Shown one piece after another: positions 42,580-57,061 of a DNA stretch of 64,000 bases. The stretch lies in IMG/VR virus record IMGVR_UViG_3300020810_001156, positions 1 through 64,000 of that record; one strand, 5' to 3'. The notes beneath the pieces were generated by a model. The model worked only from the letters and a program-made list of their open reading frames with translations, did not search any database and was not told where the DNA came from. Position 1 is the first letter of the stretch; each line of letters opens with the position of its first letter. The position numbers were made by a program, and so were the translations under genes.

Positions 42580-43983
42580 ATGAAGTTCAGAACTTTATTA
42601 TTGGGATTATCTGCGTTGTTCGTAGCATTTAACGCAGCATTCTTCTCCGTAACTGGTTTATCTAAACTATTTGCAGGAGCAGCATTTTCCGTTATGATAA
42701 TGGCAAGTTCATTGGAATTAGCTAAATTAATTACGGCTGGATATCTTTATAATTATTGGGAAAAAATAAACAAAACATTTAGAATCTATCTAAGTGGAGC
42801 AGTGGTTATATTAATACTAATCACATCATTAGGTATTTACGGATTTCTAACATCAGCATTTCAAGATACATTTAATCAATTTAGTGTTCAAGAAAAACAA
42901 CTAGCATTTCTACAACAAAAAGAAAAGTTTTGGGCAGATGACGTTGCAAGATACGATACTGAATTAGAAAGAATTTCACAAAATATTTCAACACTTTCAA
43001 ATGCTAAAGCAACCGGAATCCAAGTTAGAGATACAACTTCATCAACTGGATTTAGAAACACAATCTCAACAACCGAACTAAGATTATCACAACAAAGAAT
43101 ATCGGTTGAAGAAGATAACAGAAAAGAGGTTCAAGGAAAAAGAGAAGTAGCGGCCGATTCATTACAATCCATTCAATTAAAAATATTAGATGTTGAATCA
43201 TCAGAAGGTGTTTCATCGGAGTTAGGACCTTTACAATACCTTAGTGGATTATTGGATAAACCTATGGACCAAATTATAAACTGGTTCATTCTTATTATTA
43301 TCTTTGTATTCGACCCATTGGCAGTTGCACTTGTAATCGCATTCAACAACGCAATGAAAGTTGATAAAGGTGAAAAGGATAAAAAGAAAGTAGTTGAGAA
43401 AAGAGAACTCTATGGTGAAGAACCTGAAGAGGGCTCTGATATCTACACCGAAGGTGAATTAAAGGATTGGGATACCACATTATCAGATGGGTTAGAAGAT
43501 GAAGAATGGGATGAAGACCATGCCTTAGACCAAGTAATGAATGATATGGTATCCGATATGGATATGGAAGAACTCAATGAAGATTTATTTGGCGAGGAAG
43601 ATGATGTTCCATATGAAGATAGTAAGTTTGAAACTGACAATACTACTACGGAAGATAAAAAAAAAGTTGATGAAGCTGTAATCGTTGATGGTGTTGAGTT
43701 AAAAAAAGATACAAAAAGACGAGGTGTTGATATTGATGGTGATGGTACTATTGATGGATATGATAATACAGGAGATGGATTAATTGATGAACCAAAACCA
43801 TCATCTTCTCAACGAGCACAATATGTAATGAGAGAAAAACCATATTATGCTAGACCTGACTTTAATTGGGGAGATAGAAGTAAGTGGATAAACAATCAAA
43901 ACGCGGTAAACTATTGGTTGACTTACATAAAGAATGATAAAGATACTTCTTATCCAACCGACTTCGATTCTAAAACTTATTAA
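42580..43983 (+). CDS. membrane protein with long coiled coil and acidic C-terminus
   Basis: Three N-terminal TM helices, coiled coil, IIFVFDPLAV helix, DIDGDG/DNTGDG loops. Confidence 0.8.
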   Translation: MKFRTLLLGLSALFVAFNAAFFSVTGLSKLFAGAAFSVMIMASSLELAKLITAGYLYNYWEKINKTFRIYLSGAVVILILITSLGIYGFLTSAFQDTFNQFSVQEKQLAFLQQKEKFWADDVARYDTELERISQNISTLSNAKATGIQVRDTTSSTGFRNTISTTELRLSQQRISVEEDNRKEVQGKREVAADSLQSIQLKILDVESSEGVSSELGPLQYLSGLLDKPMDQIINWFILIIIFVFDPLAVALVIAFNNAMKVDKGEKDKKKVVEKRELYGEEPEEGSDIYTEGELKDWDTTLSDGLEDEEWDEDHALDQVMNDMVSDMDMEELNEDLFGEEDDVPYEDSKFETDNTTTEDKKKVDEAVIVDGVELKKDTKRRGVDIDGDGTIDGYDNTGDGLIDEPKPSSSQRAQYVMREKPYYARPDFNWGDRSKWINNQNAVNYWLTYIKNDKDTSYPTDFDSKTY

Positions 43984-44050: not shown

Positions 44051-45004
44051 ATGAATTTAGGATACGCTTGTATTAATATGACTCTATCAGGTCAAAAACC
44101 AAAAGTAACTACTAATCGTTCAATGATTAAAAGAACATTCTTAGAAAGGGGTGTTGGTTACGCAACTGAATTAGGGTTACAAAACGCAAGAGATTTGTTT
44201 CATATTTTAAAATGGAATAATGAAAATGGAATCAAACTATTTAGATTATCATCTGAAATGTTTCCATGGGGTTCTGAGTATGATTTAGAAACAGCACCAC
44301 ATTACCTAAGAATTAAAACAATATTAGAGGGGTGTGGTCATTATGCAAAAACAAATGGAATTAGAATTACTTCTCACCCTGGTCCTTTCAATGTTCTTAC
44401 TTCACCACATAAAAAAGTAGTAGATAATACTATTACTGATTTAGAACTACATGGTAAAGTTTTTGATTTATTAGGATTAGAAAAATCACATTATAACAAA
44501 ATCAACATTCATTGCAATGGTGTTTATGGAGATAAGAAATCTGCTATGGATAGATTTTGTGATAACTTCCAAAGATTATCACCATCGGTTCAATCTCGTT
44601 TGACAGTTGAGAATGATGATAAAGCATCAATGTATTCGGTAAAAGATTTAATGTATATTCACAACAAAATTGGTATCCCAATCGTATTTGATTATCACCA
44701 CCACAAATTTAATACAGGTGGATTGAGTGAAGAAGAAGCTCTAAAATTAGCAATCTCAACTTGGCCAAAAGGAATTAAACCCATTGTTCATTACTCTGAA
44801 AGTAAAGCATTACATGAGGAGAATGAAAAATTAAAACCACAAGCACATTCAGATTACATCAATGAATTACCCGAACTATATGGTACTGATGTTGATGTAA
44901 TGGTGGAAGCAAAAGCAAAAGAACTTGCTATTCTACCATTTATTAATAAAGATAGTGTATGTGCTTATAGTGGATTGTTAAACACACAAAGTTACGCAGA
45001 ATGA
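44051..45004 (+). CDS. uvsE: UV DNA damage endonuclease (UvsE/UVDE)
   Basis: LGYACIN, FRLSS, HPGPF, HCNG, ENDDK, FDYHHH, HYSES, AHSD, EAKAKE. Confidence 0.95.
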   Translation: MNLGYACINMTLSGQKPKVTTNRSMIKRTFLERGVGYATELGLQNARDLFHILKWNNENGIKLFRLSSEMFPWGSEYDLETAPHYLRIKTILEGCGHYAKTNGIRITSHPGPFNVLTSPHKKVVDNTITDLELHGKVFDLLGLEKSHYNKINIHCNGVYGDKKSAMDRFCDNFQRLSPSVQSRLTVENDDKASMYSVKDLMYIHNKIGIPIVFDYHHHKFNTGGLSEEEALKLAISTWPKGIKPIVHYSESKALHEENEKLKPQAHSDYINELPELYGTDVDVMVEAKAKELAILPFINKDSVCAYSGLLNTQSYAE

Positions 45005-45387
45005 TTATAGATGTAGATATTAAAGCTCCTAAGAGAGTAGAAAAGAATTGGGGATATGAATTATGGATTCACAACGATGAAGAGTATTGTGGGAAATTAT
45101 TGGTATTCACAAAAGAAAGAAATAGATTCTCAATGCATTACCACTTAAAGAAAAAAGAAAGTTGGTATGTGCAAGAAGGAAGATTCCAATTTAATTGGTT
45201 GAATGTAGAAGATGGAAAATTAGAAGGTAAAACTTTAGAGAAGGGTGATAGTGTTTTAATTGAAAGAGGATTGCCTCATCAGTTAATTTCATTAGAAGAT
45301 AACTCAATTGTATTTGAAGTTTCGACTGAACACTTTGATGAGGATAGTTACAGAGTTTATAGAGAAACACCTGAGGATTTATTATGA
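45001..45387 (+). CDS. cupin-domain protein (sugar isomerase-like)
   Basis: K.WGYE.W..N..EYCGK, SMHYH..K.ESWYV, PHQL, EVST. Confidence 0.85.
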   Translation: MIIDVDIKAPKRVEKNWGYELWIHNDEEYCGKLLVFTKERNRFSMHYHLKKKESWYVQEGRFQFNWLNVEDGKLEGKTLEKGDSVLIERGLPHQLISLEDNSIVFEVSTEHFDEDSYRVYRETPEDLL

Positions 45388-45560
45388 GTTACATAAAAGT
45401 TCACGTACCAGAAATATATCAATTAAAAGAACAATTTGAGTCTGATAAAGATAAATGGATTCAATACTATTCAAAGTATGGAGCATTTGTTGGAAGTTCA
45501 GATTCGGTAGATTACCTAACTAAAGAAATAGAAAAATATTATGATAGTAAAAAGAGTTGA
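45384..45560 (+). CDS. small hypothetical protein (58 aa)
   Basis: MSYIKVHVPEIYQL...; ATGA overlap. Confidence 0.55.
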   Translation: MSYIKVHVPEIYQLKEQFESDKDKWIQYYSKYGAFVGSSDSVDYLTKEIEKYYDSKKS

Positions 45561-46119
45561 AAAAACTCCCGTTACAAACGAAGAGTTAAACCTATATAAA
45601 GAAAGAATATCTAAATTAGATAAAGAGTTTGCAGTAACTGCATTAGATGTTGGGATGGATAAGAGAATCGTAACCATTAAGTTTGGTGGTGATTACGATG
45701 ATTTAACTTTGGTAAATCCAACAATAACAAAAACATCAGATGCTATGGTACAATATTTTGAAAAAGATTTACACAAGAAAAACAAAGTAAGAAAAACAAT
45801 TAGACATAAATCCTTTTCAGTTGATACAGACAATTTAGGTTTGGTAGAATTTTCATCGGACAACGATAGTTGGAAAACACAAGATGAGTTTATGAATGAT
45901 TTGGGCTTATTCGAATGTATTACCGCACAAAGATTAATCGATTCAATTGATGGTATTGATATTAGTTCACCACTTCGTAGATACACAGCTGAAATCAAAA
46001 AAGAAAAGAAGCCAGGTAGAAACGAAAGAGTAATGTTACAATCACCTGAAGGAGATATGGAATTTGTTAAATACAAAAAAGCACAACCTCTTTTAGATAA
46101 AGGATATAAATTGGTATAG
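45541..46119 (+). CDS. peptide deformylase-like protein with degenerate catalytic motifs
   Basis: A.DVG..KR, LVNP.I and AQRLIDSIDGI align to PDF motifs; HExxH and EGCLS lost. Confidence 0.65.
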   Translation: MIVKRVEKTPVTNEELNLYKERISKLDKEFAVTALDVGMDKRIVTIKFGGDYDDLTLVNPTITKTSDAMVQYFEKDLHKKNKVRKTIRHKSFSVDTDNLGLVEFSSDNDSWKTQDEFMNDLGLFECITAQRLIDSIDGIDISSPLRRYTAEIKKEKKPGRNERVMLQSPEGDMEFVKYKKAQPLLDKGYKLV

Positions 46120-46595: not shown

Positions 46596-46627
46596 TTTGG
46601 TTTTATCAAAATAATTTCGTATATTAG
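46596..46627 (+). promoter_or_regulatory. Bacteroidota sigma-A-type promoter for the sigma-factor operon
   Basis: TTTG 46596-46599, TATATTAG 46620-46627. Confidence 0.8.
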
Positions 46628-46918: not shown

Positions 46919-47638
46919 ATGCCAAGACCTAGAAAAAATAAACAATACTTTACACAAGATACGCAAGATGCAATTATAGCGTATAATAAATCAAAGAGTG
47001 ATAGAGAAAAAAATGAACTTTATCGGAATCGGATAAAGTATCCTTTTGAAAAATTAGCAGAAAACATATTAAATACATTTAAATTCTCTTACTTTGATGT
47101 ACCAAAAGAAGATGTACAAAAAGAAGTGGTAGCTATTCTTATTCAAAAAATTCATATGTTTAAAGAAGGTAAGGGAAAAGCATTTTCATACTTTTCAATT
47201 GTAGCAAAAAACTATCTTATCCTTAATAATAACTCAAATTATAAAAGATACAAAAAAACAGATTTGTTATCTCAGATGCCACAAACTTGGAATCCTGAAA
47301 ATGATTTTTATCACGAACAACAAGGGGATGAGTTTTCTGAATTTAAAGAATTAATGTTACAATATTGGGATAAAAATCTTACAAAAGTATTCACAAAGAA
47401 GAGAGATATTCAAATAGCAGATGCTATCTTAGAGTTATTTAGAAGAAGTCAATATATCGAAAACTTTAATAAAAAGCATTTATATCTTTTAATCAGAGAA
47501 ATGACTGATTGCAAGACTCACTATATCACAAAAGTAGTTAATGTAATGAAAGAGCATCAGAAAAAAATGTTAAATGATTATTTAGACTATGGTGAGTTAA
47601 AGGAAGATTCTGATGAAGATGAATTCTTTTCTTACTAA
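46919..47638 (+). CDS. phage RNA polymerase sigma factor (T4 gp55-like)
   Basis: QYFT...AI..YN, KLAENI, F...KGKAFSYFSIVAKNYLI resemble sigma region 2 of gp55-type factors. Confidence 0.7.
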   Translation: MPRPRKNKQYFTQDTQDAIIAYNKSKSDREKNELYRNRIKYPFEKLAENILNTFKFSYFDVPKEDVQKEVVAILIQKIHMFKEGKGKAFSYFSIVAKNYLILNNNSNYKRYKKTDLLSQMPQTWNPENDFYHEQQGDEFSEFKELMLQYWDKNLTKVFTKKRDIQIADAILELFRRSQYIENFNKKHLYLLIREMTDCKTHYITKVVNVMKEHQKKMLNDYLDYGELKEDSDEDEFFSY

Positions 47639-47688
47639 TCCTATATTTATTCTAAATAGGTTATAATACTTCACTTAAAGAAATACAA

Positions 47689-47799
47689 ATGGAATTGGAA
47701 GATATTTTCAAGACCAAAGAATTCAAATCGTTACCACTTCATAAACGAATTTGGATTAGAATTAAGGTTGCATTTTTTGGACTATTAGAATTAATGTAA
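47689..47799 (+). CDS. small hypothetical protein (36 aa)
   Basis: MELEDIFKTKEFKSLP...; follows TATATTTAT at 47642; TAATG overlap. Confidence 0.5.
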   Translation: MELEDIFKTKEFKSLPLHKRIWIRIKVAFFGLLELM

Positions 47800-47987
47800 T
47801 GAAAAAATGGACTTCGGTACGAGCAGTTTACCTACTCATGTCTCTCGTACTTTTATCCGCCACACTTCTACAAAATTGGTGGATAGTATTATTTGTAGTA
47901 ACAATGTTGCAAATCGGTGTATGGACTAAATTTTGTCCATCTAAGTTTTTATTTGAAAAGTTAGGATTAAAGAAATCAGAACTTTAA
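47799..47987 (+). CDS. DUF2892/YgaP-like small membrane protein
   Basis: W..VR......G/S, two TM helices, G.WT.FCP....F.KLG. Confidence 0.7.
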   Translation: MKKWTSVRAVYLLMSLVLLSATLLQNWWIVLFVVTMLQIGVWTKFCPSKFLFEKLGLKKSEL

Positions 47988-47996
47988 AAGTTACTT

Positions 47997-49229
47997 ATGA
48001 ATCGGTTTGCGAAAATATGTTTAGGCATGGCAGGTGCTATTATGTTCACTTTCTTTGCAGTACAAACTTGTATTGTATTTAGATGGTGTGAACCCTCTTA
48101 CTTTCTTGCCGAATTTGGATATGGTTGTGTTATTGCATTCATGCCACCATTCTTCTATGTGGTATATGATTTCATTCGTACTACAAAATTAAAAGAAGCA
48201 AATATTGATTTACAATTAAATGCTATTGATAAATCTAATTTGGTGGTTATGTTGGATATGGATGGGTACATCTTATCAGCAAACAAAAAGTTTTGTAACA
48301 CAATGATGTGTACTGAAAAAGAACTAAAGTACAAACAACATAAAAGAATGGTCCCAAAAGAATATGGTGATAGTTTAGAGTATCACGAATTTTGGGAAAG
48401 GTTAAAGAGAGGTGAAAGTATTACTGGTGAATTTGAAAGAATTGCAAAGGATGGTACATCTCGTTGGTTATTTGGTAACTACACTCCCATCCAAAGTTCA
48501 GATGGTAGTTACAACAAAGTTCTAAAGATAGCAACTGATATTACACTTCAACACGAATCCGAAGTGTTGGTAAATCAGAAAAACTCTTACTTAGAACACG
48601 CTGCGAAGATTCTCCGACACGATATGCATAGTGGTATCAACACATATATGCCAAGAGGATTATCATCATTACAAAGAAGATTATCTGAAGAAAAAATTAA
48701 AGAGTTAAAAATTGATGCTCCACTAAGGATGTTAGCAGAAGGATTGAAACACACACAAAAAGTTTATGCTGGTGTTAAGGAGTTTACAAACTTAGTTAAG
48801 GAAGATGCACAATTAGATATGAAGGAATGTAACTTATCAGAAATATTGAGAAATTACTTATCCTCTACATCTTATGTTTCACAAGTTAAAATAGATAGGT
48901 TACCATTCACTCAAGTAAACGAACCACTCTTTTGTACTGCAATAGATAACTTAATCAGAAATGGATTAAAGTATAATGATAGTAGTACAAAGGTGGTTAA
49001 AATTTATATGGAAAATGATTTTACAATTTGTGTGGAAGATAATGGTAGAGGTATTACTAATGAAGAGTTCATTGAGTTATCTAAACCATATACAAGAAAA
49101 GAAGGACAAAAGGAAGGAGGTTCAGGATTGGGATTAAACATTTGTATCGCAATTTTGAAAGAACATGGTTTTAAGATAACTGCAGAGAAGTTAGACTCTG
49201 GTACAAAATTAAAAATTAAATTAAAATGA
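47997..49229 (+). CDS. membrane PAS-domain sensor histidine kinase
   Basis: Two TM helices; PAS-PAC; H-box LRHDM; N-box DNLIRNGLKY; EDNGRGI; GSGLGL. Confidence 0.9.
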   Translation: MNRFAKICLGMAGAIMFTFFAVQTCIVFRWCEPSYFLAEFGYGCVIAFMPPFFYVVYDFIRTTKLKEANIDLQLNAIDKSNLVVMLDMDGYILSANKKFCNTMMCTEKELKYKQHKRMVPKEYGDSLEYHEFWERLKRGESITGEFERIAKDGTSRWLFGNYTPIQSSDGSYNKVLKIATDITLQHESEVLVNQKNSYLEHAAKILRHDMHSGINTYMPRGLSSLQRRLSEEKIKELKIDAPLRMLAEGLKHTQKVYAGVKEFTNLVKEDAQLDMKECNLSEILRNYLSSTSYVSQVKIDRLPFTQVNEPLFCTAIDNLIRNGLKYNDSSTKVVKIYMENDFTICVEDNGRGITNEEFIELSKPYTRKEGQKEGGSGLGLNICIAILKEHGFKITAEKLDSGTKLKIKLK

Positions 49230-49672
49230 ACACAATGATTAACTCAATCTTGTTAGTGGATGATGAGGACTTATTCCACTTGGTATTTGAAGATGCTTGT
49301 AGTATCTTAGATATCACTCTATCTTTAGAGGCACTAAATTCATCTGATGAAGCAGATGAAAAATTCAAAGAATGGTTTCCAGAAAACCCAGCAGATGAAA
49401 GACCCGAATGTGTATTCGTTGATTTGAATATTATCGGTTCTTCATATGATGGTATTGAACTTATTCGTAAAATCAATTTTGAATATGGTAACGGATGTGT
49501 AATTGGTATTATCTCATCTTCAGATGATAATCAAGAAATTGAAAAAGCAAAATCAGCAGGTGCACAATTTTGGATTATTAAATCCGATGATATTGAACCT
49601 CGATTAGAAGAATTCAGAAAAGATTATGAAGGATATCTAAACCGAACCGCTCCATTCAAAATTTATAAATAA
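49226..49672 (+). CDS. single-domain response regulator (receiver only)
   Basis: ILLVDDED, phospho-acceptor VFVDLN, ISSS, WIIK. Confidence 0.9.
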   Translation: MNTMINSILLVDDEDLFHLVFEDACSILDITLSLEALNSSDEADEKFKEWFPENPADERPECVFVDLNIIGSSYDGIELIRKINFEYGNGCVIGIISSSDDNQEIEKAKSAGAQFWIIKSDDIEPRLEEFRKDYEGYLNRTAPFKIYK

Positions 49673-49680
49673 GTTTTACA

Positions 49681-50274
49681 ATGATTGAGGTTACGAAACA
49701 TACCAGAGATATCCTATTGGGTGTTGCTAAGAAAAGGAAAGTTTATGTTGAAGGAAACTTTCTTAAACTCTTAAAAGCACCCGATGGGGATACCGAGTTT
49801 GAAGAATATCTTAAAATATGTAAGGATAAAGATTCTACTGCTCGTAGAAAAAGATTACAAGTAACTAAGCAAGTTCAACAACAAAACAAAGAGTTGGTTG
49901 ATAAACAAAAGGAAACCGATGAATTGATGATAGAACTTCAAGATGCTTTGGAATCTGCAAAACAATCTGAAGAAGAAGCAAATCAATTAAGACAAGAAGC
50001 CGAAAAAGGAATGGGTAAAGCATTAGAAGATTTGGAACTAATGCAAAAGAAAACACAATTTGAGTTAATCAGTACAATTGTTAAAGTAGCACTTTATGTG
50101 ATTATAGGAGTTGGTGTTCTCACAACTGCTATGTATGGGTTAGCATTGATTTCTGGTACTGATACACAAATCATAGGTTCTACTTGGAGTAATATGTTTG
50201 GTATTCTCCTAACTAACGCATTCTCAATCGTTGGTACGATTATGGGTGTAAAGTATGCAACTGAAAAAGAATAA
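49681..50274 (+). CDS. coiled-coil membrane protein
   Basis: Long coiled coil and two C-terminal TM helices. Confidence 0.75.
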   Translation: MIEVTKHTRDILLGVAKKRKVYVEGNFLKLLKAPDGDTEFEEYLKICKDKDSTARRKRLQVTKQVQQQNKELVDKQKETDELMIELQDALESAKQSEEEANQLRQEAEKGMGKALEDLELMQKKTQFELISTIVKVALYVIIGVGVLTTAMYGLALISGTDTQIIGSTWSNMFGILLTNAFSIVGTIMGVKYATEKE

Positions 50275-50276
50275 AG

Positions 50277-50807
50277 ATGAGTCCTCAAATCATAGATAAA
50301 GTTAGTGTGGAAACTTACTATGATGTATTATCCATACCATTTGATAGGGAAGTATCAGAACCACATCATATCAGTTCTATCGTAGATTTTAAGACCCTAA
50401 GAGAAGATACACAAAATTTTTTATTAAAACTACCCATCGTTCAGTTCACAGGTAATTTTAAGGCAGGTGGCTTGGATTCTAAACAACGATTGTATCTAAT
50501 GAGTAGTATGAATGATATCTTCTTCGTAGACACCCTTAAAACGAATTATGCTAAGTGTGTAACCAAACTGATTAATGTTCCCGATTTAAGTGGAAAGGAA
50601 GTTATTGAAAGAACTGATGAGCATAGAAGTATTAAACGAATTAGAAAATCCGAAAGTTATGAAGTTACCTATAATGAGGTGGATTATGTAATTGAAATTA
50701 CCGAAGAGGGTAATGGAACATTTACCAGCATTATGTATGGGGATAACTTCGTAATGGATTATATGTTGGAGAAAGATATATTGGAATATTTTTATAAGAA
50801 TAAGTAA
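50277..50807 (+). CDS. hypothetical protein
   Basis: ORF track; last gene of the kinase operon. Confidence 0.75.
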   Translation: MSPQIIDKVSVETYYDVLSIPFDREVSEPHHISSIVDFKTLREDTQNFLLKLPIVQFTGNFKAGGLDSKQRLYLMSSMNDIFFVDTLKTNYAKCVTKLINVPDLSGKEVIERTDEHRSIKRIRKSESYEVTYNEVDYVIEITEEGNGTFTSIMYGDNFVMDYMLEKDILEYFYKNK

Positions 50808-50859
50808 TTGTTTTTGTTTGATTTAGTATAATATACTTATTGGTATATAATAATAAATT

Positions 50860-51003
50860 ATGGCAAAAGCAAAGGGAGGTTTTGGTATTTCGTTATATCG
50901 TTCTCAAAGTAAGAAGAGACCTGGTGTTCACGCTAAGAGTAAAACTTCAAAATCTAAAAATAGTAGAAATTACAAAAAGGCATATAGAGGGCAGGGTAGA
51001 TAA
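50860..51003 (+). CDS. small very basic protein (47 aa) ending YRGQGR
   Basis: MAKAKGGFG...KKAYRGQGR; preferred over overlapping track ORF 50840-51040. Confidence 0.75.
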   Translation: MAKAKGGFGISLYRSQSKKRPGVHAKSKTSKSKNSRNYKKAYRGQGR

Positions 51004-51025
51004 TCCTACACTTTTTTGTTTATTG

Positions 51026-51034
51026 ATATTTATA
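51026..51034 (+). promoter_or_regulatory. putative phage late promoter heading the baseplate module
   Basis: ATATTTATA. Confidence 0.55.
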
Positions 51035-51058: not shown

Positions 51059-51454
51059 ATGTCAACAGATTTCGAATTATTCCCAGGCAAAAACCTTAGT
51101 GGGTTGTTTGAGGATATCTATAACAATCAAATAAATAAAAAGAAACATATTTCTGATGTCATCTTTGAAATCAGAAAAATGATTAGGCATAATGGTGATA
51201 TGGGAATTTTAGGTCCAGTCATCAAAGACTTAATTGATACATCAGTTCGTAACGATGACCAATTGGTTAAGTTAGCAACTATCGCACAAAGAATTATAGC
51301 ATCTAATCAAAAATCAGAAGGAGATACTGGATTCCTCACGGAAGCAGAGAGAGAACAATTACTTTCAGAAATTGAACAAGTTCAAGATGAGGTTAGTAGG
51401 GTAGATGATTTACAAAACGAAATAGAAGAAGTAAAACAAAAATTAGAAAAGTAA
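51059..51454 (+). CDS. hypothetical helical protein (structural module)
   Basis: ORF track. Confidence 0.8.
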   Translation: MSTDFELFPGKNLSGLFEDIYNNQINKKKHISDVIFEIRKMIRHNGDMGILGPVIKDLIDTSVRNDDQLVKLATIAQRIIASNQKSEGDTGFLTEAEREQLLSEIEQVQDEVSRVDDLQNEIEEVKQKLEK

Positions 51455-52680
51455 TGTTTGGGGATAGAAATCGTAATGTACAATCCAATCAAAGTGTTAA
51501 TATTAGAAGGCATAAAGATACTATGTCTATGGGTACTGTATATAAGATTATATTGGATATTAATGATGATATTCTTTCTGATTTAGAAATAGAAGAACCA
51601 CTAAAAGGTAAATATATAGGAGCGATTCAGTTCAGAGCTTCAACTAGTCAAAATAAAAAAGATGAAGGATTAACTTTAGCATTACCGAAAGATAAAACAT
51701 GTGTTTCTCTACCAACTATAAATGAAACAGTTGCTATTACCAATTCACCAGCTGGTGGATATTTGTATGAACGAATCATCAGTTCGGCATTACCAAATGT
51801 AAATACAAGTATAGATGAAATAAATGCATCTCAGAAAAAAGAAAAATCAGCTCAATCAAACACCGCATCTAATTATGGTAACGTACAATCAACTGGAATA
51901 TCAAGAACGGAAAGTTCATCTGATTCGATTGATGTTTCTTCGCTAGGTCAATATTTCCAACCAGATGGTACTATTCATAAACTTAAACTATATGAGGGTG
52001 ATTATTTAATTGAAAGTAGATTTGGTCAATCAATTAGATTTAGTGGTTATAATAACCCTGATAATATTTTTTCACCAAACATTATAATTAGAAATGGTGA
52101 AAATGGAGAATCCCTAACAAAGGATATAGGAACATCTACTGAAGAAAGTATTAATGATGATGGTAATATTATATTTTTAGGTAGCGGTGAACGATTATTG
52201 GAATATACATTACCAACTGAAAATGAATATCCATCATTTTTTAATTACCCATCAGAACTAAAAGGAAATCAAATATTATTAAATTCAGATAGAGTTATTA
52301 TATCGGCTAAATCAGCCGAAATGATTTTTTCTGCAAAAAAAGATATTGGTTTTATAACTGATGGTCAATTTTCAATTGATGCAACCGATGGTATAAACAT
52401 CACAACAGATAATCATATATTTGTTGATACACAGGATAGAGATATAAATTTAGATATTGGTAATGGTACTATTATGTTAGGAACTGATGGTGAGTTGGAA
52501 GCTGCACCAAAGGGTGAAACTTTGGTAGAGTTATTGGGTGAAATGATAGATTTAATAACACAACAAATATATTTAACACCAGCTGGCCCAACCTCACCTG
52601 GCCCAACAAATATAGCACAATTTACAACATTGAAATCTAAATTACAAACAATGTTAAGTAATAATGTACAACTAAAGTAA
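51454..52680 (+). CDS. baseplate hub/central spike protein (gp5/VgrG-like)
   Basis: N-terminal OB-like LP..NETV, YEGD.LIESRFGQSIRF, beta-helical ILLNSDRVIISAK, terminal TPAGP. Confidence 0.65.
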   Translation: MFGDRNRNVQSNQSVNIRRHKDTMSMGTVYKIILDINDDILSDLEIEEPLKGKYIGAIQFRASTSQNKKDEGLTLALPKDKTCVSLPTINETVAITNSPAGGYLYERIISSALPNVNTSIDEINASQKKEKSAQSNTASNYGNVQSTGISRTESSSDSIDVSSLGQYFQPDGTIHKLKLYEGDYLIESRFGQSIRFSGYNNPDNIFSPNIIIRNGENGESLTKDIGTSTEESINDDGNIIFLGSGERLLEYTLPTENEYPSFFNYPSELKGNQILLNSDRVIISAKSAEMIFSAKKDIGFITDGQFSIDATDGINITTDNHIFVDTQDRDINLDIGNGTIMLGTDGELEAAPKGETLVELLGEMIDLITQQIYLTPAGPTSPGPTNIAQFTTLKSKLQTMLSNNVQLK

Positions 52681-52681
52681 T

Positions 52682-53095
52682 ATGGCAGTAAATAAAAACA
52701 TATTGGGTGGTGCTAGTGATAGTATAAAAAAAGTTGCTGATATATCTAATATTACAAATAATCCTAAAGATACGATAAGTAGCATAACTACAGAACTACC
52801 AACTCCACCTGCATTACCAAAAGTTCCACCTAAGCCAGAATTACCGGCGTTACCAAAGGTTAGATTGCCTAAACTTCCACCTATTCCAAAGTTTAGAAAA
52901 AAGAAAGTAGAAGAAAATCCTAAACTTAAAAAAGGATTACCAAAGTTACCAACTCCACCTAATCTACCACCAATACCAGTAGTACCTAAAGTACCAAATA
53001 TTCCAAAAATACCTAATATAGAACTGCCAAAGGTACCTGAAGTAAAAATACCTGATATTAATTTACCAAATCCATCGGATTTATTAAAAAGATAA
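52682..53095 (+). CDS. Pro/Lys-rich protein
   Basis: LPKVP/IPKIP repeats. Confidence 0.7.
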   Translation: MAVNKNILGGASDSIKKVADISNITNNPKDTISSITTELPTPPALPKVPPKPELPALPKVRLPKLPPIPKFRKKKVEENPKLKKGLPKLPTPPNLPPIPVVPKVPNIPKIPNIELPKVPEVKIPDINLPNPSDLLKR

Positions 53096-53098
53096 AAA

Positions 53099-54004
53099 AT
53101 GTCTTGGGGATTATTTAAAAGAAACGTAATACGAAAGACAAATCCAAATAACAATCCTTCTTTAGATATAAATAAGGTTGCAACTATTTGGGCTGATGAA
53201 TATGATGCTGCGATAAAAAGAGGAAAAGATTTTATTAATTTAGAATCAGTACAAGCTGGTAATAAAGAAATAATGAAAAATCTTTTTAGAGTTGCGTTAT
53301 TAAAAGGATTGGCAACACCACCTGGCGTAAATTTTTCATTACCAAATGAATTTGGGAATGGTGTAAAAGCTTATTGGGCCGGAGCCCAAATGAACCCATT
53401 TCCAATTCCACTAATTCCAGCACCCGGTTCAATTCAAAATTTAGTAGTAAATTCTAATATTGTAACTAATGTGGGGGTGTGGCCTCTATACCCACCATTA
53501 AAACCCGCTAAAAAACAAGAGATAATAGTAAATATGTTTATACTTGCCGCTATTGTGCATTTATTTTCGATAGGTGGTGTTATACAAACAACTTCACTAT
53601 ATCCATCGGCACCATCCCCAATACCCGCTCCTGGTGTTATAATTTGGACGGGATATTTAATACCACCCGCAATCCCTATTCCAAATCCAAACTTCCCATC
53701 TGCGGATGGTAGTGAACTACCTGTAATAGAGCAGGTTGATAATAACACTATAAGTGAAGTTGGTCCTATTCAAGAATATGAATTACCCAATGATAGTGAT
53801 GATAGTGGATTAGGTGATGGTATAAATGGAGATGGTAGTGGATTAGGTGATGGTATAAATGGAGATAGTTCTTTTGAAGATATGGTAAACTCATCTTTAG
53901 GAGATGATATTAATGATATTGGTGATGGTAATAATATCAACAAACAAATAGAAGAATTTAAAAAACAATTAGTAGCAATACGACCAGATTGTATTAAAAA
54001 TTAA
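53099..54004 (+). CDS. hypothetical baseplate-region protein
   Basis: ORF track; context. Confidence 0.75.
   Translation: MSWGLFKRNVIRKTNPNNNPSLDINKVATIWADEYDAAIKRGKDFINLESVQAGNKEIMKNLFRVALLKGLATPPGVNFSLPNEFGNGVKAYWAGAQMNPFPIPLIPAPGSIQNLVVNSNIVTNVGVWPLYPPLKPAKKQEIIVNMFILAAIVHLFSIGGVIQTTSLYPSAPSPIPAPGVIIWTGYLIPPAIPIPNPNFPSADGSELPVIEQVDNNTISEVGPIQEYELPNDSDDSGLGDGINGDGSGLGDGINGDSSFEDMVNSSLGDDINDIGDGNNINKQIEEFKKQLVAIRPDCIKN
53803..53866 (+). repeat. tandem 33-bp-period coding duplication (SGLGDGINGD x2)
   Basis: TAGTGGATTAGGTGATGGTATAAATGGAGAT at 53803 and 53836. Confidence 0.9.
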
Positions 54005-54019
54005 AAAAACCTAAATCAA

Positions 54020-54028
54020 ATATTTATA
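54020..54028 (+). promoter_or_regulatory. putative phage late promoter (ATATTTATA-TAGAAAGGA)
   Basis: Same extended context as 36333. Confidence 0.55.
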
Positions 54029-54050
54029 TAGAAAGGAAAACATTTTAACA

Positions 54051-54584
54051 ATGGATACTGATAAATTAGTAAAAGCAATACAGATTATAGTTAAGGAGGA
54101 AATCAAAGTGATTCTTCCCAAACTCGTTAAAGAAGGTGTTAAGAAAGAAATGGCTAAGTTATTGAAAGAAAACAAAAAACTTAAAGAAGCTATTACACCA
54201 AAACAACCAACATTTATGGATTCAAATGTAATGGAAGAACCAGTTCAACCACAAAAAACATTTAGTAAGAATCCTGCATTAAATGAGGTATTGGCACAAA
54301 CACAACCCTTTAACTCACAACAAAGAAGTGGAACTAATGTTCCATCATATGCTGGGGCACCAACCGAAGTATCGTCTGGTACGATGAACTTCGATTCAAA
54401 CTCAGTACATACATTAGGTGCATCAAATATAGCACAACAAATGGGTTACGGAGATATGGCACCAAAACAAGGTTTAGGTGTTCATACTGGAAACGCTGGA
54501 TTGGATAAAGCACTAAATAGAGATTATAGTGGTTTAATGAAAGCATTGGATAAAAAGAAAGGTCCTTGGAGACCGGGAATGTAA
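54051..54584 (+). CDS. hypothetical structural-module protein
   Basis: ORF track; LNEVLAQT and ALNRDYSGLMK motifs. Confidence 0.8.
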   Translation: MDTDKLVKAIQIIVKEEIKVILPKLVKEGVKKEMAKLLKENKKLKEAITPKQPTFMDSNVMEEPVQPQKTFSKNPALNEVLAQTQPFNSQQRSGTNVPSYAGAPTEVSSGTMNFDSNSVHTLGASNIAQQMGYGDMAPKQGLGVHTGNAGLDKALNRDYSGLMKALDKKKGPWRPGM

Positions 54585-54592
54585 TATAGATT

Positions 54593-55021
54593 ATGGCAGT
54601 TGAGTTAGGAAGAAGAATTGTTAAAGATACCATTGCATACGCAAATTATGCTATTGGTATTACATTACCATTAACTTTTGGTAAAAATACCTTTGAACAA
54701 TCTTTTCTAACTAAAGACCAAGTTAAATCAAATATTAAAAATCTTCTACTTACTAAAAGGGGGGAACGTATTTTACAACCTGAATTTGGTAGTGGAATCC
54801 AATCGTTATTGTTTGAACCAAATGTAGATGATTTAGAAGGTAGAATAGAAGATACAATAAACGAAAGTTTAGAACAGTGGTTACCTTATGTTACGGCAGA
54901 AGAAATTGATATTGAATCAACTGATGAATTGAGAGATAACAATAAATTAAATGTTTCAATTAAATTTAGAATTGGTGATGATATTAATTTAGAAACCTTA
55001 ACATTCACAGTTCAGGGATAA
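54593..55021 (+). CDS. baseplate wedge protein (T4 gp25/GPW family)
   Basis: VKSNIKNLLLTKRGERILQPEFGS, QWLPYV. Confidence 0.9.
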   Translation: MAVELGRRIVKDTIAYANYAIGITLPLTFGKNTFEQSFLTKDQVKSNIKNLLLTKRGERILQPEFGSGIQSLLFEPNVDDLEGRIEDTINESLEQWLPYVTAEEIDIESTDELRDNNKLNVSIKFRIGDDINLETLTFTVQG

Positions 55022-55027
55022 TAAGAT

Positions 55028-57061
55028 ATGGCAATTACAAAAACAACAAAGAATTTTAAGGGTAGAGGTAAGGATATAAAATACCTCAATAAAGATTTTA
55101 CTGAATTCAGAACTAATCTTATTGAGTTTGCTAAAACTTATTTCCCAACAACTTATTCTGATTTTAACGAATCCTCTCCTGGTATGATGTTCATTGAAAT
55201 GGCATCTTATATTGGAGATTCACTTTCATATTATGTTGATGATACCTTAAAGGAATCATTAATGGTACATGCTGATGATATTGAAAATGTAATAGCACTT
55301 TCACAATACTTAGGATATAAACCCAAAGTATCCGCACCAGCAGTAACAACTTTATCTGTCTATCAATTAGTTCCTTCAACTGGAACTGGTGCAAACAATA
55401 CATTTGATGAAACATATCTTTTAAAGATAAAAGAAGGTATGATATTGGAATCTTCAAATGGAGTATCTTTTATTACAAAAGATGTAGTTGATTTTTCGGA
55501 TTCAACTGATAGAGAAATTACAATATACCAAACCGATTCGGTTACTGGAGAAACATCATTTTATTTAGTAAAGAAATTAGTAAAAGTTATTTCGGCAGAA
55601 GTAAAAACTGAAGAATTTACATTTGGTTCATATGAAGAATTTCAAAAAATTGATTTATTGGATACAAACATTATAGATATCTATGATGTACGAGATTCAA
55701 ATGGAAACAAATGGTATGAAGTTCCCTACTTAGCACAAGAATTGGTATTTGTGGATTATCCGAATACGGAAAGTAATGACCCAGACCTTTATCAATTTAA
55801 ATCAACAGTACCATATGTATTAAATACACTTAAAACATCTCGTAGATTTGTTAAACAGGTTAACCCAGATAGTACAACAACTATTCAGTTTGGTGCAGGA
55901 GACCCAACAGCGAATGATGAAACGATTATACCTAATTTAAAAAATGTTGGATTGGGATTACCCAATTCTATTTCTAAATTAGAAGAATCATTTGACCCAA
56001 CTAACTTTTTAAAAACCAAAACTTATGGTTCATCACCATCAAATACAACCATAACTGTAAAATATTTAGTTGGTGGTGGTGTAGAATCAAATGTTCAAAA
56101 AGGAACAATTACTCAAATTAGAAATAGTGAATTTGAAGAAGATACAACATTATTCACACCAACGCAGTTGGCAATTTATAATTCAGCTAAAAATTCAATC
56201 GCAGTAGATAATGAAGTTCCTGCAACAGGTGGTAAAGGTGGTGATACTATTGAAGAAATAAGACAAAATGCTTTAGCAAACTTTGGTTCTCAGAATAGAG
56301 CAGTAACTGCTAAAGATTATGAAGTAAGAGCATTATCAATGCCAACTAAGTATGGTTCGGTTGCAAAGGCATACGCTACGGCAGATGGTACATTAGATAA
56401 CAACTCACCATCATCAATTCTTTCTTCACCAAAAGCTCTACAAGAGTTTACTGATTTAGTGATGAGTTTTGTTGAGAAGCCAGATAGTGAAGAACCTGAT
56501 AGAAAAAGCGTTCAACAAGAAATACAAAAATATCTAACTGGAAAAACATCAAATGATAATGAAAAAAATAATCCATTCGCAATAAATTTATATTTGTTAG
56601 GGTATGATTCAAATAAAAAATTATCAAATCTTAATAGAGCAGTAAAGGAAAATTTAAAAACATATCTATCGGAATATAAAATTTTAACCGATGGTATTAA
56701 TATTAATGATGGGTTTATTATTAATATAGGAATTGAATTTGAAGTAATTACTTTAAAAAATTATAATAAAAGTGAGGTAATTTCTGATTGTATATCCGAA
56801 TTAAAAGATTATTTAAATATTGATAATTGGACATTCAACAATACAATTAATATTTCAGAATTAGAATTAATTGTAGCAAATGTTGATGGTGTTAGTTCAG
56901 TACCAAAATTAAAAATTGTAAATAAGTGTGGTGGAGAATATTCACCAAACTCATATAATATAGAAGCGGCGATTAAAGATAAGATTTTATATCCATCTTT
57001 AGACCCATCGGTTTTCGAAGTTAAATTTCCAGATTCGGATATTAAAGGGAGGGCAAGATAA
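55028..57061 (+). CDS. baseplate wedge protein (T4 gp6 / baseplate J-like)
   Basis: YLNKDF..FR..L, DFNESSPGMMFIEMASYIGD.LSYY.D, QNRAVTAKDY. Confidence 0.9.
   Translation: MAITKTTKNFKGRGKDIKYLNKDFTEFRTNLIEFAKTYFPTTYSDFNESSPGMMFIEMASYIGDSLSYYVDDTLKESLMVHADDIENVIALSQYLGYKPKVSAPAVTTLSVYQLVPSTGTGANNTFDETYLLKIKEGMILESSNGVSFITKDVVDFSDSTDREITIYQTDSVTGETSFYLVKKLVKVISAEVKTEEFTFGSYEEFQKIDLLDTNIIDIYDVRDSNGNKWYEVPYLAQELVFVDYPNTESNDPDLYQFKSTVPYVLNTLKTSRRFVKQVNPDSTTTIQFGAGDPTANDETIIPNLKNVGLGLPNSISKLEESFDPTNFLKTKTYGSSPSNTTITVKYLVGGGVESNVQKGTITQIRNSEFEEDTTLFTPTQLAIYNSAKNSIAVDNEVPATGGKGGDTIEEIRQNALANFGSQNRAVTAKDYEVRALSMPTKYGSVAKAYATADGTLDNNSPSSILSSPKALQEFTDLVMSFVEKPDSEEPDRKSVQQEIQKYLTGKTSNDNEKNNPFAINLYLLGYDSNKKLSNLNRAVKENLKTYLSEYKILTDGININDGFIINIGIEFEVITLKNYNKSEVISDCISELKDYLNIDNWTFNNTINISELELIVANVDGVSSVPKLKIVNKCGGEYSPNSYNIEAAIKDKILYPSLDPSVFEVKFPDSDIKGRAR

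What the first reader, a model, noticed from the sequence alone, without database searches (positions are those of the whole stretch)
47689..50807. Complete phage-encoded two-component signalling operon without a DNA-binding output
Seen: a DUF2892-like membrane protein, a TM-PAS histidine kinase with all catalytic boxes, a receiver-only regulator with intact Asp/Lys, a coiled-coil membrane protein and an unknown ORF. They are tightly coupled, sit behind a late-type motif and lie between the sigma factor and the baseplate genes. Established: full two-component systems are rare in lytic phages, and single-domain receivers act through protein contacts. Inference: the phage senses redox, oxygen or energy state and tunes lysis timing or host motility, via the downstream proteins or cross-talk.
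Basis: partly seen in the sequence, partly recalled or inferred. Interest (0 to 1): 0.7.

Follow-up and report, generated by a model that had tools for sequence, protein, structure and literature searches.

The report
Phage two-component sensor tied to lysis
A 253-kb uncultured aquatic phage carries its own sensor kinase, a receiver protein and a membrane partner; this trio is almost confined to viruses and in many related phages is fused to the genes that burst the host, which suggests these phages time lysis by sensing the cell's state.

Summary
Window 47642-50807 is one tightly coupled operon behind a genome-wide late-type promoter motif. It encodes a 36-aa ORF, a 62-aa two-TM DUF2892-like protein and a membrane-anchored PAS histidine kinase with H, N, G1 and G2 boxes intact but an atypical DHp. 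These are followed by a receiver-only regulator (D12/D13/D66/S97/K119), a coiled-coil protein with a C-terminal TM hairpin (cc197), and an accessory 176-aa protein. All six ORFs are under purifying selection. It is not an artefact: more than 570 IMG/VR contigs carry it.

New findings:
- Kinase, receiver and cc197 form a conserved three-gene module. It was found in only 8 MAG contigs among 185,579 species genomes and in no GenBank phage.
- The sensor domain is swapped between lineages (PAS, GAF, TPR), while the receiver is nearly invariant.
- In 25 of 50 non-redundant viral loci the module lies within 3-4 genes of an endolysin and/or a Phage_holin_4_1 holin. The holin gene often overlaps the module's first gene.

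Best reading, at moderate confidence: a post-translational, signal-gated lysis-timing device.

Against this reading, in this genome the operon sits beside baseplate genes, 120 kb from the endolysin. The redox-sensing and sigma-factor claims remain leads only.

The parts
47642..47651 (+). Late-type promoter motif TATATTTATT, 47 nt before the first ORF
   Evidence: TATATTTAT[AT] occurs 23 times on the + strand of the 252.6-kb genome, 22 of them intergenic. It lies upstream of the major head protein operon, head-tail adaptor and tail sheath. The motif is kept upstream of the cassette in 15 of 67 distinct upstream regions examined, all close relatives.
47689..47799 (+). 36-aa ORF (s36), no TM segment; its stop overlaps the next start (TAATG)
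   Evidence: Conserved in 31 non-redundant homologs; dN/dS 0.20.
47799..47987 (+). 62-aa two-TM protein (tm62), DUF2892/YgaP-like_TM-like; candidate kinase accessory or holin-type protein
   Evidence: Pfam PF11127 E 0.03, below cut-off. Two TM segments. Conserved 'FCPSKF..KLG'. dN/dS 0.22. In 14 related loci the holin gene overlaps its start.
47997..49229 (+). Membrane-anchored PAS histidine kinase, 410 aa. N-terminal TM region res 4-58; PAS res 82-186 (48240-48554); atypical DHp with His208 (48618-48620); HATPase_c res 312-409 (48930-49223)
   Evidence: dN/dS 0.14.
49226..49672 (+). Receiver-only response regulator, 148 aa; phospho-acceptor Asp66 (49421-49423); overlaps the kinase stop (ATGA)
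   Evidence: Pfam Response_reg 31.8 bits. 49 invariant columns including D12, D13, D66, S97-99, W116 and K119. dN/dS 0.08..
49681..50274 (+). cc197: small N-terminal domain (1-37), long cytoplasmic coiled-coil helix (38-158) running into TM1, then a nearly invariant TM2 'STWSNxFGILLTNxFSIxGTIMGVKYA'. Proposed output partner of the receiver
   Evidence: Follows the receiver in 46 of 54 loci; some contigs were truncated, or the ORF caller missed it where tblastn found it. Atlas clusters are 100% viral. dN/dS 0.14.
50277..50807 (+). 176-aa accessory protein (u176), alpha/beta, unknown fold
   Evidence: Present in 22 of 54 non-redundant loci, always directly after cc197. AF2 pLDDT 81; no PDB match. 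dN/dS 0.15.
46919..47638 (+). 239-aa upstream gene, candidate phage sigma factor (unverified); lies behind a Bacteroidetes-type promoter motif at 46620
   Evidence: No Pfam, NCBIfam or PDB hit. Atlas feature search gives a lead to viral Sigma70_r2 clusters. Motif.
42580..43983 (+). 467-aa membrane plus coiled-coil protein (family memCC_F7), which in other lineages lies directly after cc197 or the holin
   Evidence: No Pfam or PHROG hit for the window's copy; a relative (L028) gave only a weak PHROG match of unknown function.
51059..57061 (+). Downstream baseplate module (includes gp25-like 54593-55021 and gp6-like 55028-57061), behind its own late-like motif at 51033

Best explanation
The stretch is a late operon of a complete, about 253-kb uncultured tailed phage, probably of a Bacteroidota host. 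Its core is a three-gene signalling module, almost confined to viruses:
- a membrane-anchored PAS histidine kinase;
- a receiver-only response regulator;
- a membrane-anchored coiled-coil protein (cc197).
Two small proteins precede the core (36 aa; 62-aa two-TM) and an accessory 176-aa protein follows it.

Proposed mechanism. Late in infection the kinase reads a cytoplasmic or membrane cue through its PAS domain; other lineages carry GAF or TPR sensors on the same kinase core. It autophosphorylates on His208 and passes the phosphoryl group to Asp66 of the receiver. The receiver has no DNA-binding domain, so it acts by protein contact on cc197, and/or on the small TM protein or the holin. This advances or delays permeabilisation of the inner membrane, that is, the time of lysis.

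Shown here: gene content, catalytic motifs, operon coupling, the late-type motif, purifying selection, restriction to viruses, sensor swapping, and physical linkage to holin and endolysin genes in relatives.

Inferred: phosphotransfer, the nature of the signal, the receiver-cc197 contact, and the effect on lysis.
For: Domains and motifs.

Operon coupling across 54 non-redundant loci: HK->RR median -4 nt, RR->cc197 median -1 nt.

The late motif is shared with the head and sheath genes.

dN/dS is 0.08-0.22 for all six ORFs, lowest for the receiver.

The triad is kept while the flanks change.

Sensor swapping on one kinase core: 50-71% identity to GAF, TPR and other architectures.

Restriction to viruses:
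- at least 574 IMG/VR loci and 3,845 receiver clusters;
- only 8 MAG contigs among 185,579 species genomes;
- the receiver profile hits 1 of 301 genomes sampled from its phylum;
- cc197 Atlas clusters are 100% viral.

Lysis linkage:
- An endolysin (PG_binding_1 + Amidase_2) and/or a holin lies within 3-4 genes of the triad in 25 of 50 non-redundant viral loci.
- All 16 holin family members hit only Phage_holin_4_1, best E 1e-8.
- The holin gene overlaps tm62 or the kinase gene by 1-20 nt in 17 loci.
- The lysis-adjacent state occurs in several deep clades of the kinase tree and in a further divergent lineage, L109-L111.

Metatranscriptome contigs, one from a DNase-treated library, bridge the HK-RR-cc197 junctions.
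Against: - In this genome the operon sits between a putative sigma gene and baseplate genes. The endolysin is at 169,760-170,671, about 120 kb away, and no Phage_holin_4_1 homolog exists anywhere in the genome.
- Thirteen non-redundant viral loci with enough flanking sequence show no recognised lysis neighbour; 12 more were too short to judge.
- The loci are related to each other, so the counts are not independent events.
- Lysis cassettes lie in variable genome regions where unrelated accessory genes also accumulate.
- cc197 shows no homology to the holin family and has no fold match.
- RNA-library contigs can contain DNA, and the flanking genes are covered equally.
Confidence: 0.45

Rival explanations
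1. Host take-over by cross-talk. The phage kinase and/or the free receiver plug into host phosphorelays, as a kinase or phosphatase of host regulators, a phosphate sink, or a CheY-like effector on a host machine. This would reprogram host metabolism, envelope or motility late in infection. cc197 would merely tether the system to the membrane.
For: The receiver is far more conserved than the kinase or cc197: 62-100% identity, 49 invariant columns, dN/dS 0.08. This fits a conserved external target. One Bacteroidetes chromosome (967-kb contig) carries the kinase-receiver pair without cc197, among ordinary cellular genes. Single-domain receivers acting by protein contact are well established (general knowledge).
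Against: The receiver subfamily is almost absent from cellular genomes, so no matching host kinase family is visible. cc197 is found only in viruses and always co-inherited. The linkage to holin and endolysin genes is not explained.
Confidence: 0.2
2. Neutral or unrelated accessory cassette. The triad has a function unrelated to lysis, for example sensing for another late process. It sits next to lysis genes in many phages only because both occupy the same variable, late-transcribed region.
For: In the window's clade and in the L027-type clade no lysis genes are adjacent. The flanks vary widely and include glycosyltransferases, ClpP and 2OG oxygenases.
Against: Start-stop overlap of the holin gene with tm62 or the kinase gene in 17 loci argues for co-translation rather than mere proximity. 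Adjacency recurs in three different gene orders and in several deep clades.
Confidence: 0.15
3. Superinfection or envelope-stress sensor. The membrane kinase, with the small TM protein, detects a second infection or envelope damage and imposes lysis inhibition or exclusion, by analogy with T4 RI/RIII and holin T.
For: A small TM protein is translationally coupled upstream of the kinase in 39 of 54 loci: tm62 in 29, tmF10 in 10. The kinase has only a very short external loop, which suits intramembrane sensing. The linkage to the holin is as above.
Against: The conserved, swappable sensor is cytoplasmic (PAS, GAF or TPR), which points to an intracellular cue. There is no homology to RI or RIII; PHROG searches gave no such hit.
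Confidence: 0.1
4. Virion- or baseplate-related function, suggested by the position directly upstream of the baseplate module in this genome.
For: Position in the window and in the clade L001-L016. The late motif is shared with structural genes.
Against: The adjacency to baseplate genes is limited to one clade. All other lineages place the triad elsewhere.
Confidence: 0.04
5. Assembly artefact, or host DNA mis-joined into a phage contig.
For: None found. A few homologous contigs are binned into MAGs of five different phyla, which shows that binning around this cassette is unreliable.
Against: Composition is uniform. Copies 100% identical lie on two other IMG/VR contigs. Synteny is kept at 83-98% identity in many samples. 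Thirteen or more DNA runs hold 80-98% of the sampled words of the stretch. The genome is rated 100% complete by CheckV.
Confidence: 0.01

Closest known systems
LytSR two-component system controlling the holin/antiholin-like LrgAB (with CidAB) in Staphylococcus and Bacillus (own knowledge)
   Same: A membrane sensor kinase plus a response regulator is wired to holin-type membrane proteins that decide cell lysis. The kinase is thought to read the energetic state of the membrane.
   Different: LytR is a LytTR DNA-binding regulator that acts on transcription, and the system is cellular. Here the regulator is receiver-only, the kinase is a PAS/atypical-DHp type rather than the LytS 5TM-Lyt type, and the system is viral and sits in the lysis operon itself.
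T4 lysis inhibition: antiholins RI and RIII acting on holin T (own knowledge)
   Same: A phage-encoded device that senses a condition and postpones holin triggering post-translationally.
   Different: There is no phosphorelay in T4. RI senses superinfection in the periplasm. No sequence similarity was detected.
CheA-CheY-FliM and other single-domain receivers such as DivK and CpdR (own knowledge)
   Same: A stand-alone receiver carries the full D-D-D-S/T-aromatic-K set (W116 at the CheY Y106 position) and must signal by protein contact. The partner gene is conserved next to it.
   Different: The kinase is a membrane HisKA-like dimer type, not CheA. No CheW, MCP or motor genes are present. The closest solved receiver is a Cytophaga stand-alone regulator, 3ilh, at only E 8e-7.
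Sensory rhodopsin II - HtrII - CheA - CheY photo-signalling (own knowledge)
   Same: In four distinct related phage contigs (six loci: L058/L084 from one record, L085, L062, L059, L060), a 193-aa microbial rhodopsin and a TM plus coiled-coil protein (x169) lie between the receiver and cc197. This brings together a rhodopsin, membrane coiled-coil 'transducer-like' proteins, a kinase and a CheY-like receiver.
   Different: x169 and cc197 have no detectable homology to Htr or MCP proteins; the only hit was to a short Htr fragment at E 0.34. The rhodopsin is absent from the window's genome.
Histidine kinases reported in other viruses: kinases preceding the curli (T8SS) genes of uncultivated pelagiphages (PMC9599517); hybrid kinases of phycodnaviruses such as EsV-1 (own knowledge)
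   Same: Virus-encoded sensor kinases carried as accessory genes.
   Different: In the passages read, the pelagiphage kinases are described next to curli genes, FecR and an adenylate cyclase, with no paired receiver or cc197-like partner mentioned. The EsV-1 kinases are hybrid eukaryote-virus proteins. Neither case is described as a kinase-receiver-membrane-partner module linked to lysis genes.
cREC, the divergent receiver domain of jumbo phages linked to NAD+/ADP-ribose enzymes (PMC7824862)
   Same: A receiver-fold protein encoded by large phages.
   Different: By that paper's statement, cREC is never found with histidine kinases. The receiver here always directly follows a kinase gene, usually with overlapping stop and start codons (median -4 nt, range -4 to +11).
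Small membrane-protein modulators of sensor kinases, such as MgrB-PhoQ and SafA-PhoQ (own knowledge)
   Same: A 50-66-aa TM protein is encoded immediately upstream of, and coupled to, the kinase gene (tm62 or tmF10).
   Different: No homology. The interaction is untested. tm62 could equally be a holin-type protein.

Membership tests
Two-component sensor histidine kinase (HisKA-type DHp + HATPase_c) | HATPase_c catalytic domain with N, G1 (DxGxG) and G2 boxes | tested here: met
   PF02518 57.7 bits against a cut-off of 26.4. 'DNLIRNGLKYND', 'EDNGRG' and 'GSGLGLN' are invariant or nearly so.
Two-component sensor histidine kinase (HisKA-type DHp + HATPase_c) | Phospho-acceptor His followed by an acidic residue, about 105-115 residues before the N-box Asn | tested here: met
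   His208-Asp209 are invariant. The distance from His208 to Asn322 is 114 residues, counted on the sequence. The typical spacing is from own knowledge.
Two-component sensor histidine kinase (HisKA-type DHp + HATPase_c) | DHp domain recognised by a curated HisKA, HisKA_2 or HisKA_3 model | tested here: not met
   No Pfam model matches residues 181-300, even at E<=10. NCBIfam kinase models align only from about residue 229 onward. This is therefore an atypical DHp subfamily.
Two-component sensor histidine kinase (HisKA-type DHp + HATPase_c) | Autophosphorylation and phosphotransfer to the cognate receiver | not testable with these tools
   Needs biochemistry.
Response regulator receiver (CheY-like) domain, stand-alone | Acidic pair, phospho-acceptor Asp, Ser/Thr, aromatic switch residue and Lys at the canonical positions | tested here: met
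   D12, D13, D66, S97, W116 and K119 are invariant in 27 homologs. PF00072 scores 31.8 against a cut-off of 30.2.
Response regulator receiver (CheY-like) domain, stand-alone | No output (DNA-binding or enzymatic) domain | tested here: met
   148 aa in total. The receiver domain covers 8-120, and only a 25-residue conserved tail follows.
PAS sensor domain | PAS fold recognised by curated models | tested here: met
   PAS_3, PAS_9 and PAS_4 are all above cut-off. TIGR00229 scores 39.6 against 22.9.
PAS sensor domain | Identified cofactor (FAD, heme or FMN-Cys) that would define a redox, oxygen or light sensor | tested here: inconclusive
   The best solved matches are the FAD-PAS of MmoS (3ewk, E 1e-11) and the Aer PAS (8dik). 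No LOV-type 'NCRFL' motif is visible in the sequence. The two Cys residues are not strongly conserved. The cofactor-binding residues were not assessed.
DUF2892 / YgaP-like_TM (PF11127) | Score above the Pfam gathering threshold | tested here: not met
   14.7 bits against a cut-off of 25.3, E 0.034. The protein resembles the family in length, in having two TM segments and in a C-P motif, but membership is not established.
Phage lysis cassette (holin + endolysin operon) | Adjacent to, and co-oriented with, a holin and an endolysin | tested here: not met
   For the window: the endolysin is at 169,760-170,671 and no Phage_holin_4_1 homolog is present. For relatives the feature is met in 25 of 50 non-redundant viral loci, with holin-tm62 or holin-kinase gene overlap in 17.
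Holin (for tm62 or cc197) | Small TM protein that permeabilises the inner membrane at a set time | not testable with these tools
   tm62 has the size and topology of a two-TM holin. cc197 has no homology to the neighbouring holin family. The function needs expression and lysis assays.
Sigma-70 family (for 46919-47638) | Recognisable region 2 or region 4 | tested here: inconclusive
   No Pfam, NCBIfam or PDB hit. The Atlas feature search ranks viral clusters in which 21% of members carry Sigma70_r2. This is a lead only.

The most novel reading that the evidence does not exclude
Large aquatic phages carry a signalling module of their own, almost confined to viruses, that makes lysis conditional. 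A phosphorelay with interchangeable sensors (PAS, GAF, TPR, and in some genomes an adjacent rhodopsin) gates the holin post-translationally through a receiver and a membrane coiled-coil partner. The virus, not the host, would then decide the moment of lysis from the cell's energy, redox or light state.
Probability: 0.3. Interest if true: 0.85.

Novelty: new variant of a known kind. Interest (0 to 1): 0.72.

Why it matters
Lytic phages are usually thought to time lysis with a fixed holin clock. The known exceptions are few: T4 lysis inhibition, and quorum or arbitrium sensing in temperate phages.

A widespread phosphorelay, almost confined to viruses, that is wired into lysis operons and carries swappable sensors would mean three things:
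- Many abundant aquatic phages take an environment-dependent lysis decision.
- The latent period and burst size measured in the sea could depend on host physiology or light through a viral sensor.
- A new type of two-component output exists: receiver to membrane coiled-coil protein.

The module is compact and its parts are well defined, so the question can be tested directly in vitro and in surrogate hosts.

Tried and rejected
- Complex prediction of receiver + cc197(1-125): score 0.24, below the mark, no verdict. It counts neither for nor against binding.
- Fold search of the cc197 model (AFDB clusters): only coiled-coil noise. A profile of cc197 against PDB sequences gave nothing below E 0.003, again coiled coils.
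- The 176-aa protein: Foldseek PDB and VIA-align wide gave no match (best Z 4.8). The Atlas gave no usable hit.
- cc197 against the holin family by hhalign: probability 0.3%.
- blastn and tblastn against 50,697 GenBank phage records: no relative of the stretch, the receiver or cc197, and only weak kinase hits.
- Sigma-70-type promoter scan: 26 sites against 27 expected, uninformative. Terminator-like sites were not above chance in a useful way.
- Pfam HisKA models on the DHp: nothing.
- Sigma-factor check of 46919-47638 against the PDB: nothing.
- First look-ups of kinase ORFs by exact sequence failed because the ORF bounds were wrong.
- Literature searches for a described phage-encoded kinase-receiver module, or a phage rhodopsin next to one, found none in the held library. 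That library is incomplete.
- Host motility and a DNA-binding output were considered and dropped. There are no motility genes nearby and no HTH domain in any of the six proteins.

Full report
WHAT THE GENOME IS

The window is the first 64 kb of a single 252,603-bp IMG/VR virus record that CheckV rates 100% complete. It has about 32% G+C, and nearly all genes lie on the + strand.

It is a tailed phage:
- gp25-like and gp6-like baseplate wedge proteins lie at 54593-57061.
- The gp6-like protein is 39-43% identical to those of Flavobacterium phage vB_FspM_immuto and Microcystis phage Mel-JY01.
- Elsewhere in the genome lie a major head protein, a head-tail adaptor and a tail sheath.

Three things point to a Bacteroidota host:
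- a SusC/RagA-type TonB-dependent receptor gene;
- an intergenic motif, TTTCGTATATT[T/A]GT, which contains the Bacteroidetes -7 element TAnnTTTG (the consensus is from my own knowledge);
- the Flavobacterium-phage baseplate relatives.

DNA runs that hold the stretch are salt-marsh and marine metagenomes.

THE OBSERVATION

Six co-oriented ORFs fill 47689-50807:
- s36, 36 aa.
- tm62, 62 aa, two TM segments.
- A 410-aa kinase.
- A 148-aa receiver.
- cc197, 197 aa.
- u176, 176 aa.

The two ORFs overlap by TAATG in different frames.

Kinase. It has an N-terminal TM region, a PAS domain (res 82-186) and HATPase_c (312-409). No curated HisKA model recognises its DHp. Even so, 'LRHDMHSGINTY' with His208-Asp209 is invariant, as are the N, G1 and G2 boxes.

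Receiver. It passes the Pfam threshold narrowly (31.8 against 30.2 bits). D12, D13, D66, S97-99, W116 and K119 are invariant in 27 diverse homologs. It has no output domain.

cc197. It folds as a small N-terminal domain followed by one roughly 120-residue helix that runs into TM1. A second TM helix follows, and its sequence is almost invariant.

Genes are tightly coupled. HK/RR overlap by ATGA. Across 54 non-redundant loci the median gaps are -4 nt (HK->RR), -1 nt (RR->cc197) and +1 nt (cc197->u176). All six ORFs are under purifying selection, with dN/dS of 0.08-0.22.

LATE EXPRESSION

TATATTTAT[AT] occurs 23 times on the + strand and 22 of these are intergenic. It precedes the head, adaptor and sheath genes, two giant ORFs, and this operon at 47642. 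Close relatives keep the motif upstream of the cassette.

It could not be confirmed as a sigma factor.

Contigs from four salt-marsh metatranscriptomes, one of them DNase-treated, bridge the HK-RR-cc197 junctions. This is weak evidence for transcription, because such libraries can contain DNA.

NOT AN ARTEFACT, AND NOT RARE

- At least 574 IMG/VR stretches encode a relative of the kinase.
- The receiver has 3,845 clusters at 90% identity in the large protein collection, including Tara samples and contigs up to 250-297 kb.
- No GenBank phage record holds the receiver or cc197.

A VIRUS-SPECIFIC THREE-GENE MODULE

Across 80 viral loci the kinase (58-100% identity), receiver (75-100%) and cc197 (46-100%) stay together while the flanks change completely. 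Only the clade nearest the window keeps the sigma-like gene upstream and the baseplate genes downstream.

The kinase core is 50-71% identical to metagenomic kinases with other sensors:
- GAF, on the same N-terminal TM pair, followed by the receiver and cc197 (L101);
- TPR (L100);
- other N-terminal regions;
- long multi-PAS arrays.

Among one genome for each of 185,579 species, only 8 MAG contigs carry the kinase signature. These are binned to five phyla, and most of them also carry the receiver and cc197, which suggests mis-binned viral DNA.

One copy is clearly cellular. It lies on a 967-kb Bacteroidetes contig among ordinary genes, and neither that locus nor its genome has cc197. A receiver profile finds only that genome among 301 sampled from its phylum. 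In a kinase tree the two Bacteroidetes MAG copies nest inside the viral diversity (the root is uncertain). cc197's Atlas clusters are 100% viral.

LINK TO LYSIS

I clustered all flanking ORFs of 54 non-redundant loci. This revealed several recurrent neighbour families:
- An endolysin with PG_binding_1 + Amidase_2, both above cut-off.
- A four-TM protein whose 16 tested members all hit only Phage_holin_4_1, best E 1e-8.
- Several small TM proteins.
- A membrane coiled-coil family, which is also present in the window at 42580-43983.

The commonest gene order is: small TM - endolysin - holin - tm62 - kinase - receiver - (x169) - cc197 - membrane coiled-coil protein. A second order places the holin after cc197-u176. 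A third, in more divergent contigs, places the endolysin directly before the kinase.

A holin and/or endolysin lies within 3-4 genes of the triad in 25 of 50 non-redundant viral loci. The holin gene overlaps tm62 by 4-20 nt in 14 loci, and overlaps the kinase gene by 1-4 nt in 3 loci. The lysis-adjacent state appears in several deep clades of the kinase tree, including the sister group of the window's clade.

In the window's own genome the endolysin is 120 kb away and no homolog of that holin exists.

MECHANISM

I therefore read the module as an extension of the lysis operon.
1. A late-made membrane kinase senses an intracellular or membrane cue.
2. It phosphorylates a receiver that has no DNA-binding domain.
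3. The receiver acts on membrane proteins, with cc197 first in line, to advance or delay membrane permeabilisation.

The genes, motifs, coupling, conservation, virus restriction and synteny are shown. Phosphotransfer, the signal, the receiver-cc197 contact and the effect on lysis are inferred.

The signal is open. The PAS domain's best solved relatives are the FAD-binding PAS domains of MmoS and Aer, but this falls short of a cofactor assignment.

A complex prediction for receiver + cc197 gave no verdict.

COMPARISON WITH KNOWN SYSTEMS

Functionally the nearest analogue is LytSR-LrgAB, a two-component system that controls holin-like proteins. The wiring here is post-translational and viral. 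T4 lysis inhibition is the nearest phage analogue, but it has no phosphorelay.

The receiver works like CheY-class single-domain regulators. The kinase fails one membership criterion of the HisKA class, since no curated DHp model recognises it, while it meets the catalytic criteria.

I found no description of this module in the searchable literature. That library is incomplete.

VERDICT

- The module is a new variant of a known kind of system. It is widespread, almost confined to viruses, and experimentally tractable.

Noticed in passing
L084:10937-11518 (JGI 3300048121, 297-kb contig); also L085, L058, L062, L059, L060: A compact 193-aa microbial rhodopsin sits between the receiver and cc197 in four distinct related phage contigs, together with a TM plus coiled-coil protein (x169). 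It scores 53 bits on PF01036 and has the retinal Lys in 'DLTAK'. Aligned to green proteorhodopsin, it keeps D97 and T101 but has Q at E108. It also matches the viral rhodopsin OLPVRII at E 3e-7. In L059 the endolysin lies directly upstream. A rhodopsin inside a phage lysis and signalling cassette appears undescribed in the searched library.
   Followed up: partly
window 20180-22900 (- strand): A full-length 906-aa TonB-dependent receptor with a CarboxypepD_reg domain, Plug and barrel (SusC/RagA-type N-terminus). It is one of the few minus-strand genes. This is an unusual phage cargo and a hint of a Bacteroidota host. The only relatives in GenBank 'phage' records are unannotated metagenomic fragments.
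   Followed up: partly
whole genome G000; e.g. window 2925, 9385, 23100, 34639, 44014, 46620 (class A) and 3660, 19416, 33259, 42358, 47642 (class B): There are two sharply defined intergenic motifs. Class A, AAAwwwTTTCGTATATT[T/A]GT, is like the Bacteroidetes -7 element and probably marks early or middle genes. Class B, (C/G)TTATATTTATA, lies before structural genes and is probably late. Together they would allow a temporal map of the whole genome.
   Followed up: partly
window 50797-51009 (includes the 47-aa basic ORF 50860-51003): One metatranscriptome contig (X15) joins 50797 to 51009, skipping 211 nt. The small, very basic ORF here is present in only some related loci. This is an indel polymorphism between the operon and the baseplate module.
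   Followed up: no
window 42580-43983: A 467-aa protein with three N-terminal TM segments, a coiled coil, a fourth TM and an acidic tail. It belongs to a family that in other lineages lies directly after cc197 or the holin (14 of 54 loci). It is a possible further member of the lysis and membrane gene set. It has no Pfam or PHROG annotation.
   Followed up: partly
L101:1287-2702; L100:16-3061; L088:4334-7500: The same kinase core and N-terminal TM pair carry a GAF domain instead of PAS (L101). Other contigs have two kinases in tandem: multi-PAS plus TPR in L100, and two kinases in L088. The module therefore collects different inputs on one output.
   Followed up: partly
L090:4837-8237 (Bacteroidetes MAG, 967-kb contig): This is the only clearly cellular copy: a multi-PAS protein, the kinase and the receiver sit among TauE, cytochrome c, TetR, ABC1 kinase and M15 peptidase genes. 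Its genome has no cc197. The copy nests within viral sequences in the kinase tree, which may indicate virus-to-cell transfer.
   Followed up: partly
window 44051-46119: A run of repair and accessory genes lies just upstream: UV-damage endonuclease UvdE (221 bits), a cupin and a peptide-deformylase-like protein. In this clade they are inserted between the membrane coiled-coil gene and the signalling operon.
   Followed up: no
G000:C1:110811-125297 and 142082-153682: Two giant ORFs (4,828 and 3,866 aa) lie in operons that start with the late-type motif. They were not analysed.
   Followed up: no
L093:8818-12917 (MAG contig binned as Bdellovibrionota): A PrkA / SpoVR / DUF444 gene trio lies on the minus strand next to a copy of the triad. 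The contig also carries a papain-like protease and a D12 methyltransferase. Whether this 89-kb contig is viral was not resolved.
   Followed up: no
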